A stretch of 63,904 nucleotides of DNA, counting the filler, from Octopus bimaculoides (Eukaryota): NCBI RefSeq assembly GCF_001194135.2. It is 8 parts of 8 records of this genome, joined end to end, with 100 filler letters (N's around TTAATTAATTAA, not from the genome) between each part and the next. Parts side by side here need not be neighbours in the genome. Positions count along the whole stretch, not along the records: positions 33,299 to 49,339 come from NC_068982.1; 7 more parts are not named here. One strand, given 5' to 3'. The position numbers and the translations under genes are program-made. Positions 33,199 to 38,077 of the stretch are shown here, piece after piece. Position 1 is the stretch's first letter; each line of letters begins with the position of its first letter. The notes beneath the pieces are model-generated. The model had not been told where the DNA came from and searched no databases. It worked only from the letters and a program-made list of their open reading frames with translations.

Positions 33199-33483
33199 NN
33201 NNNNNNNNNNNNNNNNNNNNNNNNNNNNNNNNNNNNNNNNNNTTAATTAATTAANNNNNNNNNNNNNNNNNNNNNNNNNNNNNNNNNNNNNNNNNNNNGG
33301 TGGGATGAGCTTATGAGGGGGTGTTGACGATGAAGGGGGAAGGAGAAGGTGGATGTAAGAGAGGGGGAAAATGGGTATGGGAGGGGAGAGAAAGAGAGGA
33401 AGAGAGGAGAGAGGGTGGGTATAAGAGAGGGAAGGTGGATTGAGAGAGGGGGAAGGTGGGTATGGGGGGAGAAAGAGGGGGAC

Positions 33484-33515
<32 letters not shown>

Positions 33516-34487
33516 GTATATCGCTAAGTTTTTAGTTATTATTAATCTCAAGGCTGTTTCTCACCTGATGACGTGTTTTAATAATATGCCAAATGTATAC
33601 TTTAGTACAGCCTGACCGACTTTATCAGGTCAAAATATATCCGGGTTTTGGTATTTGTTCTGGCATTTCGTGGAATTTGGGCAGTTACGTATTTCCGAGC
33701 CGTTGAACGTTTGACAAAAATTTCATTTGTGACACATCCCATTTTCCGCTTTTTTTTTTTCGTCTTTCTTTTGTTACACGATCTTATTCCGCCCCGTTTG
33801 TTATTCTTTTATGTTTTCTTCCACTCTCACGGTCTCTTCGTCTTCTGCACTCGAACAAGCTATAGGTAAGTCAAAATTTAACAATCTAAGGGAAGTAATT
33901 AGATATAACTTATCAGCAGAGTTATTTTCCTTTATGGCTAAAAAAACTGAGCGTCTAAATATCAAAGTTGAGAAAATGTTTAAACTAAACGTATGTAAAC
34001 CATTAGATTTTATTTGTATTTTAAATAAACGTTATTTGAAAGAAATACAATGTTTTAAACTGATTATAAAATGCAATGTAAGTAGTTAACTTCGCACCAG
34101 ACGCATATTTGCCGTATTTCAGTAAACATAGTTTATTCCTAAACAATTTTGTCGAAATACTTTTACTTTAACCCTAATAAATATACTCTAAAACTTAATC
34201 CTAACAAAAGCACAGCTCTTAAATTTTAAATTCTATTTTCTAAACGTCTCCTTCGTTGATTTTTTTTTTAATGGTGTGATGCAGCTGTCTCGCATACGAG
34301 AACGCCTCATGTTTTATTCCTATATTAAATTTTTTTTTAAAACTCAAAGAAAAATCATACATACATGCATGCATGCATGTATACCTACCTACCTACCTAC
34401 CTATCTGCCTACCTACCTACCTACCTACCTCCCTACCTCCCTACCTCCCTTCCTACCTCCCTACCTCCCTACCTACTTACCTACCTG

Positions 34488-34618
34488 CCTACCACGGGAC
34501 AGTGGTACTGACGTTTATAGTTCCAAGAAGACATCTCTTCCAGCTGGCTAACGACACACATTCTGGAAGAGATGTCTTCCTGGGGCTATAAACGTCAGTA
34601 GCACTGTCCCGTATAGGA
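34488..34618. repeat. Hairpin of ~55-bp inverted arms (fold-back family F)
   Basis: cgggacagtggtactgacgtttatagttccaagaagacatctcttccag / ctggaagagatgtcttcctggggctataaacgtcagtagcactgtcccg with a 19-nt spacer. Confidence 0.9.
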
Positions 34619-34731
34619 CGCCACTCATTGTTGGCAATTATTTGTTACGATTCCGTATTGCTACTGTTTACATCACGCTCAGAGGTTTAATAATAATAAT
34701 AATAATAATGATAATAATAATAATAATAATA

Positions 34732-34768
<37 letters not shown>

Positions 34769-35408
34769 TATATATACATATATATATCCCTATATATATA
34801 TATATATATNNNNNNNNNNNNNNNNNNNNNNNNNNNNNNNNNNNNNNNNNNNNNNNNNNNNNNNNNNNNNNNNNNNNNNNNNNNNNNNNNNNNNNNNNNN
34901 NNNNNNNNNNNNNNNNNNNNNNNNNNNNNNNNNNNNNNNNNNNNNNNNNNNNNNNNNNNNNNNNNNNNNNNNNNNNNNNNNNNNNNNNNNNNNNNNNNNN
35001 NNNNNNNNNNNNNNNNNNNNNNNNNNNNNNNNNNNNNNNNNNNNNNNNNNNNNNNNNNNNNNNNNNNNNNNNNNNNNNNNNNNNNNNNNNNNNNNNNNNN
35101 NNNNNNNNNNNNNNNNNNNNNNNNNNNNNNNNNNNNNNNNNNNNNNNNNNNNNNNNNNNNNNNNNNNNNNNNNNNNNNNNNNNNNNNNNNNNNNNNNNNN
35201 NNNNNNNNNNNNNNNNNNNNNNNNNNNNNNNNNNNNNNNNNNNNNNNNNNNNNNNNNNNNNNNNNNNNNGTGCAGTTACTGTTAATACCTAATTTAGAGA
35301 ATTAACATTGCTTGTTTTCACTTTTTCGATATCAGTGAATAATTTCACTGGAAAAAGATACATAAGGTTGCCAAGAATTTATCTCTCTCATCGCAGATCG
35401 GTGGCTAT

Positions 35409-35453
35409 CGGACGCTGACGAAGGGAAATAACCCTGAAACCCGGGTCCGTTCG
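35409..35453 (+). ncRNA. Minimal type I hammerhead ribozyme with intact catalytic core
   Basis: cggacg-CTGACGA-aggg(aaataa)ccct-GAAA-cccggg-TC-cgttcg: 6-bp stem I (one G-U), 4-bp stem II, palindromic helix III (acccgggt), GUC cleavage site after 35447. Confidence 0.85.
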
Positions 35454-35744
35454 TGCTACAGATCACGATGAGAGGGATAACTTCCCTTGGCAAAACAAAC
35501 AGGACACAGAAGTGTGTCGATAAGCCAGCTGGAGGAGATGTCCTCCTGGGGCTAAAAGCAACAGTAACATCCACCCCTAGGGGTCAGCCACATTTAAGTG
35601 GCAATATACTTCACCTTTTATATATATAGTTTTCTACTATATCGTTGGGCCGACCAAAGCCTTGTTAGTAGATTTGATAGATGGAAACTGAAAGAAGGCT
35701 TCCATATGTATGTATGTATGTATGCATGTATGTAATCAGACGCC

Positions 35745-37470
35745 GAAGATGGTATTTGTGCTGAGGGCCTGCAATTTGGTGGTGACCACATCACAGTCCC
35801 TTCATGAACTTATTAGTGTAATCTGGAGGGATGGTGCGATGCTTAAGGACTGGAAGGATGCGATTATTCTTCCTCTCTATAAAGGAAAGAGAGCCAGAGT
35901 AGAGTGTGGCAACTACAGAGATATAACTCTACTATCAGCTGTTGGCAAGGTTCTGGCAAATATTCTTCTTACCCTCCTGAATGGGTGTTTTGTAAATGAT
36001 GTCCCATCTAAATCTCAATGTCGTTTCCGATGGATATGATTTTTACAGTGAGACAGATGCAGGAGAAGTGCTATGAGCAGAATATGGATCTTGTCCAGGT
36101 ATTCATTGATTTAACTAAGACCTTTGATACTGTGAATAGGGCCTCCCTATGGAAAATACTTGGCAAACTTGGTTGTCTGGATTACTTTGTATCTATAATC
36201 AAATCATTTCATGATGGGATGGAGGCTTGGGTCAGTGTTGGTGGTGGCATGGCGAGACCCATTCCAGTAGAGACTGGGGTCAAGCAGGGTGTCATCATTG
36301 CCCCAATTCTCCTTTCATTGTATTTTGCTGCTACTCTTACTCATGCTTTTGCTGTGGACAGCTCTCCTGGGATATATGTTAGGCATCGATATTTTGGCCA
36401 TTTTTTTAACCTACGTCGATTTCTTGCCAATTCAAAAGTTTTCCAGTCTCTTATTCGTGACCTCCTTTATGCAGATGATTGAGAGTGACTTAATCACTCA
36501 TACAGCGGATGATATGCAACTACTTGTGAATCATATTTCTGCTTCTTGCAAGGCACTTGGACTCAGCATTAACCTGGACATGACTGTTGTAATGTTCTAG
36601 CCTACATCAGGAAACCCATATGTGGAACCAGCTACCTTGGTTGAAGGAACAATACTGAATGTGGTAGACAAGTTTACCTACCTGGGCAGCACACTCAGCC
36701 GTTCTTGTTTCCTGGATGATGAAATATCTTTCAGGATGCAGAGAGCAACTGATTCCTTCAGGTCTCTTGAGTCTTATGTCTGGTCCCAACATGACATCAC
36801 AAGGCGAACAAAAATTGCTGTGTACCGTGCATATGTACTGACATCGCTCCTTTACTCATGTGAGACATAGACTGTTTACAAACGTCATGTAATGGTCCTT
36901 GAACGCCTCCATCAGAGATGTTTGAGATACATTCTGAATGTTGGCTGGACCTCAAAAACTCCAGATACACAGGTCCTGAGGAAAGCCAATATCCTGAGTA
37001 GTGAGGCAATGGTGTACAACTGGACACCTTGTTAGAATGAATGATAGCAAGATCCCTAAACAGATGCTATATGGGGAACTTGTTAGTGGAAAGCGACCTC
37101 GGCAGAAGCCAAGACTGCGATTTAAGGATTGTGTAAAGTTCTCATTATGGCATGTGAAATGCGGGAAGCTTACTGGGAGAGTAATGCTTGTCATCGCCAT
37201 GGATGGAGGAAACATGTAAAGGAGGGAGTCGATACCTTTGAAAGAGCATGCATTCTTCATGAAGAATTTAAGCGTGCTGCTCGAAAACGTATTGCTAGTG
37301 CAACGAATGGGGAAAGTATGGCCTGCAATGTTTGCAGTCGTGTATGTTTGTCAAGAGCAGGGCTCGTTAGTCACCAACGAAGCCACAAGTGTAAAGGATA
37401 AGGTAGTCTTGAGCGCACAATGTTCCTAAAGGTCAGTAATGGTTTTCCTCGGTCACGAGAGGACGGCCAT
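35745..37470 (+). mobile_element. RTE-BovB-like LINE, 5'-truncated (RT + C-terminal C2H2 finger + 3' UTR)
   Basis: DWKDAIILPLYKGK, CGNYRDITLLS, FIDLTKTFDTVNR, GVKQG, LLYADD, FTYLGS, TGHLVRM and CNVCSRVCLSRAGLVSHQRSH; several stops and frameshifts. Confidence 0.95.
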
Positions 37471-38077
37471 CCTGTATGTAATGCATGTATGATTATATAT
37501 ATATACATGTGTGTATGTGTATTTATATATGTATATGTGCCTCTATGTATGCATATGAACATATATGTGTGTGTGTGTGCGTATACATGCATACATACAT
37601 GCACGCACGTGCCCCATCCCCACATGTATCTTGTGAATGATATTTCCAACCGAGACGTTACAACCGTCTCTGTTGCTGACATTTATCAACGGTCTCTCCC
37701 TTTGTGCTAATGCGCCATTTTCTATCATTAATAAAATTGTCGGCATTTTTGATGACACGGGTATGCTAGTTAATAAATAAATAAATAAATAAATAAATAA
37801 TGAATAAATAAATAAGTAAACTATAAATATTTATAAGTAGCGTTGGTAAAATGTCGATAATAAGCGACTAATAAACATGTCGCATAAAGTACCTTCTAGT
37901 ATTTAGTTACTGCCCTATACGTCACGAAATCAATTCTCAGCACGATAAACTGTCTTTTATCCATATCTGGATCGATAAAATATAGTGCCTGTCAAGTACT
38001 GGGCCATTCGAACATGTCCGTTACTTGTCACAATAGCACTTGAAACATTATACCATTAGCGGTCAATATGGTAGATA

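What the first reader, a model, noticed from the sequence alone, without database searches (positions are those of the whole stretch)
35368..35575. Intact hammerhead ribozyme at the tip of a hairpin inside a fold-back element
Seen: a textbook minimal type I HHR (35409-35453; CUGACGA, GAAA, GUC, stems I and II fully paired, loop-less palindromic helix III) is the loop of a ~38-bp-arm hairpin (35368-35405 / 35455-35493), followed by a family F arm (35500-35575). Established: loop-less palindromic helix III is typical of PLE-associated HHRs that cleave as dimers. Inference: a non-coding element that looks like a MITE but carries a conserved self-cleaving RNA, i.e. a possibly undescribed retrozyme-like or PLE-derived family. 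Novelty cannot be confirmed without database searches.
Basis: partly seen in the sequence, partly recalled or inferred. Interest (0 to 1): 0.9.

Follow-up and report, generated by a model that had tools for sequence, protein, structure and literature searches.

The report
Octopus hammerhead-ribozyme repeat element
The hammerhead self-cleaving RNA motif is real and conserved, but it lies inside a roughly 330-base non-coding octopus retroelement of an already known general kind (retrozyme or Penelope-related), not in a DNA fold-back transposon.

Summary
Positions 35409-35453 carry a complete type I hammerhead (HHR): CUGACGA, GAAA, U-C cleavage site after 35447, a 6-bp helix I, a 4-bp helix II and the palindrome ACCCGGGU as helix III. 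It sits at the tip of a 126-nt hairpin. Zero of 300 simulated pieces gave even a relaxed match.

The "fold-back/MITE" reading does not hold. I found two full homologues in Octopus vulgaris. The unit's ends are not inverted repeats.

A covariance model built only from the O. vulgaris hairpins finds the window copy at 43 bits (E about 3e-8). All 34 modelled pairs hold in all three copies, and 18 carry compensatory changes. In O. vulgaris the core pair C3-G8 is replaced by U3-A8, and helix III stays palindromic (ACAUGU, ACGCGU).

The window's "fold-back F" copies are head-to-head, 5'-truncated copies of the unit; one carries a dead HHR.

Best reading: a non-autonomous HHR retroelement, probably mobilised by Penelope-like elements. 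It is a new member of a known kind. Rfam does not detect it, and its activity is untested.

The parts
35295..35367 (+). 5' domain of the repeat unit. It includes the small hairpin AGUGAA-UAAU-UUCACU at about 35333-35350.
   Evidence: Homologous to the 5' domains of the O. vulgaris copies L006 5632->5553 and L007 30871-30917. nhmmer covers hmm positions 1-343 over 35290-35622.
35368..35408 (+). Left arm of the long hairpin. It is the closing stem that extends helix I, and it ends in the internal loop UAU (35406-35408).
   Evidence: Fold. All modelled pairs hold in the three copies, and many carry compensatory changes.
35409..35453 (+). Type I hammerhead ribozyme. Helix I 5' strand 35409-35414; core CUGACGA 35415-35421; helix II with its loop 35422-35435; GAA 35436-35438; helix III palindrome ACCCGGGU 35439-35446; C17 at 35447 (predicted cleavage after this base); helix I 3' strand 35448-35453.
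   Evidence: Sequence; descriptor scan and simulations; covariance-model match at 43.4 bits, E = 3e-8; covariation.
35454..35493 (+). Right arm of the long hairpin.
35494..35628 (+). It holds four local hairpins: GACACA/UGUGUC 35503-35518; GGAGGA-GAUG-UCCUCC 35531-35546, set inside AGCC/GGCU; CCCC-UA-GGGG 35574-35583; GCCAC/GUGGC 35587-35602. It ends in TATATATATA.
   Evidence: Collinear homology with L006 and L007. Seven-sequence alignment with compensatory changes in the GAUG hairpin. Fold.
38452..38749 (-). An older, decayed, nearly full-length copy of the same unit. Its hairpin (38572-38707) carries a dead HHR: CCGAGGA (U4->C), a broken helix II (AUAG/CCCA), and a helix III that is no longer palindromic. 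Its helix I, CUGUA/UGCAG, is of the O. vulgaris type.
   Evidence: nhmmer hmm 32-338, E = 1.3e-16; weak covariance-model hit; sequence.
38757..38868 (+). An inverted, 5'-truncated copy of the 3' domain. It lies head-to-head with the decayed copy and produces the 'fold-back' I2.
   Evidence: (I2).
34493..34640 (.). Two 5'-truncated 3'-domain fragments lying head-to-head (minus-strand arm about 34493-34565, plus-strand arm 34563-34640).
   Evidence: (D16, D19).
34732..34809 (.). A (TA)n/(CA)n microsatellite running into the 460-N assembly gap that ends 25 nt upstream of the unit.
   Evidence: The O. vulgaris copies are flanked by (TA)n on both sides.

Best explanation
Positions 35295-35628 are one solitary copy of a roughly 300-340-nt non-coding retroelement family found in octopus genomes.

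Anatomy. The sense RNA has three parts: a short 5' domain, a 125-nt hairpin whose tip is a canonical type I hammerhead ribozyme, and a 3' domain made of several small hairpins that ends at a (TA)n tract.

Shown here:
- The unit, its defined ends and its (TA)n setting.
- Conservation of the HHR core.
- Compensatory maintenance of helices I, II and III and of the long closing stem between species.
- The existence of 5'-truncated and head-to-head inverted copies.

Inferred:
1. The family spreads through an RNA intermediate by target-primed reverse transcription.
2. The enzymes most likely come from Penelope-like elements. Those elements carry HHRs, prefer microsatellite targets and typically leave inverted 5'-truncated partner copies.
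3. The HHR cuts the sense transcript after C35447. Two copies would pair through the palindromic helix III to form a double hammerhead; a monomer would do so weakly, through a 2-bp helix III closed by a CCGG tetraloop.
4. After cleavage, the roughly 40-bp extension of helix I would hold the two products together. That would favour religation or circularisation, as in retrozymes.
5. This particular copy is probably an inert insertion product rather than a master copy.
For: HHR anatomy and statistics.

Organism. The only database relative of the ORF that spans the element is an Octopus bimaculoides protein. It translates a second copy with the same hairpin-plus-3'-domain order. The neighbouring LINE RT is closest to O. 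vulgaris proteins.

Homologues. L006 5632->5296 and L007 30871-31173 are collinear with the window unit and equally spaced.

Independent model test. Model R1 was built from the two O. vulgaris hairpins only. It finds window 35367-35493 full-length at 43.4 bits, E = 2.9e-8.

Covariation:
- 34 pairs, with 100% of 102 cells paired.
- 18 pairs carry changes on both sides; 0 of 500 shuffles reach this.
- Slid controls give 32-42% paired cells and 1-3 such pairs.
- Only 44-50% of paired columns are identical between the window and O. vulgaris copies.

Core. CUGACGA becomes UUGAUAA or UUGAAAA, i.e. C3-G8 becomes U3-A8. This natural covariation is described in PMC4209133, and PMC11167929 summarises that the C3-G8 pair is needed for cleavage. 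Helix III is a palindrome in all three copies.

Dimer prediction.

3' domain structure and covariation.

Retroelement signatures:
- Ends that are not inverted repeats, and (TA)n flanks.
- 5'-truncated, head-to-head copies.
- A decayed copy with a dead HHR.

Literature on PLE insertion architecture, microsatellite bias and solitary retrozymes: PMC8557442 and bioRxiv 10.64898/2026.07.22.740005.
Against: - No autonomous partner was identified. The only RT in the piece is LINE-type.
- No tandem (retrozyme-type) arrangement was seen in the three loci. The 460-N gap hides what lies upstream of the window copy.
- Only three full copies, one decayed copy and one copy inferred from a protein were available, so the covariation rests on few sequences. 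The alignment was fitted by the model.
- No Rfam hammerhead model matches.
- Position 10.1-11.1 is A-U rather than the usual G-C.
- The predicted monomer MFE is an inactive alternative pairing, 7.6 kcal/mol more stable than the active fold.
- Neither of the two truncated copies starts at the cleavage site.
- Cleavage was not tested.
Confidence: 0.7

Rival explanations
1. A LINE-mobilised SINE that carries a hammerhead, like the SMalpha/Sjalpha elements of schistosomes. The 3' domain and (TA)n tail would be recognised by a non-LTR (LINE) reverse transcriptase, not by a Penelope-like element.
For: The unit has defined ends, a microsatellite tail and 5'-truncated copies. A LINE RT lies 130 nt downstream. 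SMalpha is a 335-bp SINE-like element with a type I HHR (PMC8490949).
Against: The adjacent LINE is itself 5'-truncated, and a different SINE-like repeat and a microsatellite separate it from the unit. The head-to-head pairs duplicate the same 3' region, and the unit inserts into (TA)n; both are signatures reported for PLEs (PMC8557442). HHRs are a hallmark of PLEs and their derivatives (PMC4209133; bioRxiv 10.64898/2026.07.22.740005).
Confidence: 0.17
2. A DNA-level fold-back or MITE-type transposon that captured a ribozyme in its loop.
For: A long hairpin. Fold-back copies of 'family F' lie nearby (I2, D16, D19). The heptamer TTGCCAA/TTGGCAA occurs at several arm ends.
Against: The hairpin arms are not conserved between copies, yet they stay paired through 18 compensatory pairs. 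The unit's ends are not inverted repeats. Similarity between the hairpin arms and the F arms is not significant (best p about 0.014 before correction for 10 tests). The fold-backs resolve into head-to-head truncated copies of a directional unit.
Confidence: 0.03
3. A host-domesticated, single-copy cis-acting ribozyme (as with the amniote intronic HHRs), with the repeat context incidental.
For: The core and all helices are intact at this locus.
Against: The same unit occurs at unrelated loci in two species, with different flanks, and as decayed and truncated copies. No gene context is visible in the piece.
Confidence: 0.03
4. A chance match to the hammerhead consensus.
For: No Rfam hammerhead model scores it.
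Against: 0 of 300 simulations matched. It is homologous, collinear and covarying in two O. vulgaris copies.
Confidence: 0.01

Closest known systems
Non-LTR retrozymes of animals (Cervera & de la Pena 2020, PMC7229834; Li et al. 2026 preprint, 10.64898/2026.07.22.740005)
   Same: A non-coding unit within 170-400 nt and with GC below 50%. A canonical type I HHR: helix I of 6 bp with a looped extension, helix II of 4 bp, and a short palindromic helix III. A highly self-paired RNA. Solitary 'monomer' copies are known to be dispersed. The family is related to PLE terminal repeats.
   Different: No tandem array was seen in the loci examined. The copies share fixed 5' and 3' ends set in (TA)n. circRNA was not tested.
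SMalpha / Sjalpha SINE-like retroposons of schistosomes (Ferbeyre 1998 and Laha 2000, cited through PMC8490949)
   Same: A dispersed non-coding unit of about 335 bp with an internal type I HHR that has a weak helix III.
   Different: No sequence relation is known, and no Pol III A/B boxes are evident here. This family has the (TA)n setting and head-to-head truncated copies.
Minimal HHRs in Penelope-like element pLTRs (PMC4209133; Lunse et al. 2017, cited in PMC8490949)
   Same: A palindromic helix III that implies dimeric action. The U3-A8 core covariation. A microsatellite-biased, inverted and truncated insertion architecture.
   Different: PLE minimal HHRs have a long helix II (5-8 bp) with a bulged nucleotide and a short helix I, without a long closing stem. 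Such a minimal HHR does exist in octopus, in a different 150-nt repeat (L009, L010). The window motif is of the canonical type, and no PLE ORF or pLTR is present.
Newt satellite 2 / axolotl retrozyme HHRs
   Same: A helix III of 1-2 bp closed by a palindromic tetraloop, cleavage as a double hammerhead, and a need for an internally looped helix I extension (PMC6155905, PMC7229834).
   Different: Those are tandem satellite arrays in amphibians, and the sequences are unrelated.
MITEs / fold-back DNA transposons
   Same: A hairpin-forming DNA, and nearby inverted-repeat copies.
   Different: No shared TIRs, no target-site duplication, a directional unit and 5' truncations.

Membership tests
Hammerhead ribozyme, type I | Conserved core: C3 U4 G5 A6 N7 G8 A9, G12 A13 A14, the A15.1-U16.1 pair, and H17. 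| tested here: met
   CUGACGA ... GAAA ... U-C at 35415-35447; descriptor scan.
Hammerhead ribozyme, type I | Three helices around the core, with helix I open-ended. | tested here: met
   Helix I has 6 bp, helix II 4 bp and helix III is a palindrome. The dimer MFE forms the double hammerhead.
Hammerhead ribozyme, type I | Helices supported by compensatory changes among homologues. | tested here: met
   helix I has 4 of 5 pairs with double changes; helix III's third pair is AU, GC or CG; helix II shows G-C to G-U changes; the core C3-G8 becomes U3-A8. Only 3 sequences were available, and the alignment was fitted by the model.
Hammerhead ribozyme, type I | A match to a curated Rfam hammerhead covariance model. 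| tested here: not met
   No hammerhead family is listed at gathering score or at E<=10 on 530 nt and on 63 nt. The reason was not determined.
Hammerhead ribozyme, type I | Loop 1 / loop 2 tertiary contacts. | tested here: inconclusive
   The internal loop UAY lies 5' of the 6-position helix I, and loop 2 is A-rich with 5-6 nt (AAAUAA, CAACAA, CAAUA) in all copies. The resemblance to the Schistosoma HHR is recalled from memory, not tested.
Hammerhead ribozyme, type I | Site-specific self-cleavage. | not testable with these tools
   Needs transcription and cleavage assays.
Non-LTR retrozyme | A short non-coding unit (170-400 nt), GC below 50%, with a type I HHR. | tested here: met
   Units of 334, 337 and 303 nt with GC 0.40-0.43. 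No Pfam domain in the overlapping ORFs.
Non-LTR retrozyme | Head-to-tail tandem repeats, so that two HHRs release a unit-length RNA. | tested here: not met
   There is no tandem similarity around the window copy. L006 and L007 hold single units between (TA)n tracts. The 460-N gap upstream leaves the window copy incompletely tested.
Non-LTR retrozyme | Expression as linear and circular RNA. | not testable with these tools
   No transcriptome data were available.
Penelope-like element (autonomous) | An ORF with a telomerase-like RT and a GIY-YIG endonuclease, flanked by pLTRs. | tested here: not met
   The only RT in the piece is LINE-type (RVT_1; closest solved structures are R2 and LINE-1 ORF2p). 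No GIY-YIG domain was found.
PLE-mobilised / PLE-derived non-autonomous element | Insertion signatures: a microsatellite target, 5' truncation, and an adjacent inverted 5'-truncated copy. | tested here: met
   (TA)n flanks. Head-to-head truncated copies at 34493-34640 and at 38452-38868. The criteria are taken from PMC8557442.
PLE-mobilised / PLE-derived non-autonomous element | Sequence identity of its terminus with an autonomous PLE of the same genome. | not tested
   The octopus genomes could not be searched as a whole. Only about 124 kb of O. vulgaris was sampled.
MITE / fold-back DNA transposon | Terminal inverted repeats shared by copies, and target-site duplications. | tested here: not met
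   The 5' and 3' ends are not inverted repeats. The arms differ between copies. No convincing TSD is visible.

The most novel reading that the evidence does not exclude
This would be an undescribed cephalopod family of SINE-like hammerhead retroelements. It would have fixed termini and insert into (TA)n, making it organisationally intermediate between PLE pLTR minimal HHRs and tandem retrozymes. Its canonical ribozyme is kept active between octopus species by compensatory evolution, including the catalytic C3-G8 to U3-A8 switch. That would imply an RNA-level function, such as processing or circularisation of abundant small RNAs in octopus tissues.
Probability: 0.35. Interest if true: 0.55.

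Novelty: new member of a known kind. Interest (0 to 1): 0.4.

Why it matters
The family gives a clean comparative case in cephalopods. No HHR repeat family from cephalopods turned up in the searched literature. The only mention found was a bare count of 235 Rfam Hammerhead_1 hits in the giant squid genome (PMC6962438).

The hammerhead and its 40-bp helix I extension are maintained by compensatory change, while the primary sequence drifts to about 60% identity. The catalytic-core pair switches as a unit. This supports the view that these ribozymes are selected at the RNA level within retroelement lineages.

It also shows that curated covariance models can miss bona fide animal hammerheads.

It adds no new mechanism. 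It does offer a defined substrate for testing dimer against monomer cleavage, and for asking whether octopus expresses retrozyme-like circular RNAs.

Tried and rejected
- Rfam scans of the piece, of 530 nt and of 63 nt: no hammerhead hit. Four viral contigs matching a loose HHR pattern were chance matches and gave no positive control.
- A six-frame concatenated protein query to fish for translated copies: nothing.
- The exhaustive protein-representative search returned P0002-P0005. P0003 and P0004 are translations of an unrelated 58-nt satellite on an ENA contig (L005). P0002 and P0005 are unrelated repeat proteins.
- An exact 26-mer scan of the JGI metagenome contigs: none.
- Exact-protein look-ups for the window's RT ORF and for P0001: not on record.
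- The idea that the hairpin arms derive from F-family termini: not significant.
- A tandem-repeat test of the flanks: negative.
- Three ENA loci carrying related LINE RTs (L011-L013): no family member and no octopus SINE, so they are not octopus.
- A second HHR-core-like string in the palindrome 41851-41994: helix I is poor, so it is probably chance or an assembly artefact.
- Weak covariance-model hits at L007 20678-20731 and window 40916-40962: degenerate or chance.
- Pfam on 20 ORFs of the piece: only RVT_1.

Full report
**Observation.**
The piece (33299-49339) is eukaryote-like scaffold sequence with N gaps and microsatellites.

At 35409-35453 the plus strand reads CGGACG-CUGACGA-AGGG-AAAUAA-CCCU-GAAA-CCCGGG-U-C-CGUUCG. 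That is a complete type I hammerhead:
- all invariant core bases;
- helix I of 6 pairs;
- helix II of 4 pairs;
- the palindrome ACCCGGGU as helix III;
- cleavage predicted after C35447.

The surrounding 126 nt (35368-35493) form a hairpin of -61 kcal/mol, z = -7.4. Its arms extend helix I through a small internal loop.

A descriptor scan finds this as the only full HHR in the piece, and 300 simulated pieces gave no match even to a relaxed descriptor.

Thermodynamic prediction:
- The monomer prefers an inactive alternative pairing (CGGAC with GUCCG), at -60.5 kcal/mol against -52.9 for the active fold.
- Two molecules together have the double hammerhead, with an 8-bp helix III, as their minimum (-126.5 against 2 x -60.5).

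No Rfam hammerhead model reports the motif at any threshold tried. I could not establish why.

**Organism and neighbours.**
The minus-strand ORF that runs through the element has one database relative, an 'uncharacterized protein' of Octopus bimaculoides. This protein matches our frame -2 over the 3' domain (23 of 24 residues). After a frameshift it matches frame -1 over the hairpin's right arm and the HHR (26 of 30). It therefore translates a second copy with the same order of parts. Its only differences inside the HHR fall at 35443-35448. The most parsimonious reading is G16.2 to A and C17 to A; this is an inference.

Downstream of the element lie a SINE-like repeat with a (TATG)n tail (35629-35735; at least 10 copies in 79 kb of O. 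vulgaris) and a 5'-truncated, frameshifted LINE. The LINE's RT is RVT_1, its closest solved structures are R2 and LINE-1 ORF2p, and its best relatives are O. vulgaris proteins at 78% identity. No GIY-YIG domain or PLE ORF was found in the piece.

**The family.**
The LINE relatives gave access to about 124 kb of the O. vulgaris chromosome assembly (L006-L010). I extended the descriptor to allow the known U3-A8 core variant. It then found two HHRs, each at the tip of a 125-nt hairpin and followed by an 'F arm':
- L006 5632->5296, minus strand;
- L007 30871-31173, plus strand.

Three homology blocks are collinear and equally spaced with the window: the HHR tip, the 3' domain, and a terminal TATATATATAGTT.

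The repeat unit is therefore 5' domain + HHR hairpin + 3' domain.
- Lengths are 334, 337 and 303 nt, with GC 0.40-0.43.
- Identity is about 60% between the window and O. vulgaris copies and 74% between the two O. vulgaris copies.
- The two ends are not inverted repeats of each other.
- Both O. vulgaris copies sit between (TA)n tracts.
- The window copy ends in (TA)n. Upstream, a (TA)n tract runs into the assembly gap, which ends 25 nt before the unit.

**Structure conservation.**
A covariance model built only from the two O. vulgaris hairpins (A2, R1) finds window 35367-35493 over its full length at 43.4 bits, E about 3e-8.

On the three-sequence alignment:
- All 34 modelled pairs are standard pairs in all three sequences (102 of 102 cells).
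- 18 pairs show changes on both sides; 0 of 500 shuffles reach this.
- Sliding the partners by 1-3 columns gives 32-42% pairing and 1-3 such pairs.

Paired columns are only 44-50% identical between the window and O. vulgaris copies. Helix I is CGGACG/CGUUCG in the window, against CUGCA/UGCAG and CUGCA/UGUAG in O. vulgaris. Helix III is ACCCGGGU, ACAUGU or ACGCGU, always a palindrome.

In the core, the only differences are at the free position N7 and the joint change of C3-G8 to U3-A8. C3 and G8 pair in the active ribozyme: single changes abolish cleavage and a double change partly restores it (summarised in PMC11167929). U3-A8 is a described natural variant (PMC4209133).

Caveat: there are only three sequences, and the model made the alignment. 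However, the window sequence played no part in defining the structure.

**The 3' domain and the 'fold-backs'.**
Seven sequences of the 3' domain align. They share:
- a hairpin with a constant GAUG loop and a covarying stem (GGAGGA/UCCUCC, GGAAGA/UCUUCC, GGAAAA/UUUUCC, AGAGGC/GCCUCU);
- an enclosing stem;
- a terminal GCCA...UGGC hairpin.

A profile of the whole unit shows that the window's fold-back 'C' is a nearly full-length minus-strand copy (38749->38452) lying head-to-head with a 5'-truncated plus-strand 3' domain (38757-38868). Fold-back 'A' is two truncated 3' domains lying head-to-head.

Copy C carries a dead HHR: CCGAGGA, a broken helix II and a non-palindromic helix III. It still has an O. 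vulgaris-type helix I. The family is therefore old, has subfamilies, and decays after insertion.

**Interpretation.**
Several features together point to a non-autonomous retroelement copied from RNA, not a DNA fold-back transposon:
- directional units with fixed ends;
- 5' truncations;
- head-to-head duplicated 3' parts;
- a microsatellite setting;
- an HHR on the sense strand.

Microsatellite targeting and an adjacent inverted 5'-truncated copy are characteristic of Penelope-like elements (PMC8557442). PLEs and their derivatives are the animal elements that carry HHRs (PMC4209133; 10.64898/2026.07.22.740005). PLEs occur in cephalopods (PMC8557442, PMC6962438). I therefore favour PLE-dependent mobilisation, but no partner was found.

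The architecture of the HHR is that of retrozyme-type canonical type I motifs, not of PLE minimal HHRs: a 6-bp helix I with a looped extension, a 4-bp helix II with a 6-nt loop, and a short palindromic helix III (PMC7229834, PMC6155905). Octopus also has PLE-style minimal HHRs, in a different 150-nt repeat (L009, L010).

How it most likely works (inferred):
1. Two copies pair through helix III and cleave after C17.
2. The long helix I keeps the products together, which would favour religation or circularisation.
3. Solitary genomic copies such as this one are probably inert products.

**Novelty.**
The kind is known: HHR-bearing short retroelements, in solitary and tandem forms, with dimeric cleavage and U3-A8 covariation. 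I found no report of this family or of cephalopod retrozymes in the searchable literature. Dfam and Repbase could not be queried. I rate it a new member of a known kind and of moderate interest.

Noticed in passing
L009:22738-22890 (+) and L010:7096-7246 (-): A different octopus repeat of about 150 nt (87% identity between the two copies). Each copy follows an (ATA)n or (CAA)n tract and carries a Penelope-style minimal hammerhead: GACAC-CUGAUGA-A-GGCUG...CAGCC-GAAA-CG-U-U-GUGUU, with the loop-less palindrome ACGU as helix III. There is no copy in the window piece.
   Followed up: partly
window 41851-41994: A perfect 72+72-nt palindrome directly after the N gap. It holds the core-like string CUGAAGA-G-AUUGCA-AGAG-UGCAAU-GAAA on both strands. 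Helix I is poor, so this is probably an assembly artefact or chance.
   Followed up: partly
window 35629-35735: A SINE-like repeat ending in (TATG)n. It is very abundant in O. vulgaris (at least 10 copies in 79 kb at about 80% identity) and directly abuts the HHR element.
   Followed up: partly
window 35740-37820: A 5'-truncated LINE broken by frameshifts. Its RT carries YADD, it has a C-terminal CCHH-like motif, and it ends in microsatellites. Its closest proteins are O. vulgaris RT fragments (78% identity).
   Followed up: partly
window 39741-39970 and 41043-41272: A pair of 230-nt inverted repeats, 97% complementary and 1072 nt apart (I1). This is an unclassified element with long terminal inverted repeats, and no Pfam hit in its ORFs.
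   Followed up: no
window 46747-46854 and 47060-47194: Two direct repeats of about 110 nt, 81-84% identical and spaced 313-340 nt apart (D13, D18). They may belong to a short tandem duplication.
   Followed up: no
L010 about 7250-7330 (minus strand, upstream of the minimal-HHR repeat): A tRNA-like segment with box A-like and box B-like motifs (GGCATAGTGGCA...GAGTTCGAATCC) next to the minimal-HHR repeat. It may be a tRNA-derived SINE head.
   Followed up: no
L005 (ENA contig ctg47993, 554 kb): A 58-nt satellite array called as ORFs of 974-1705 residues. It gave spurious protein hits to the element's ORF.
   Followed up: yes
window 35409-35453: The Rfam 15 hammerhead models do not report this intact, conserved type I HHR even at E<=10 on a 63-nt input. 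Curated covariance models can miss animal HHRs with a loop-less helix III.
   Followed up: partly
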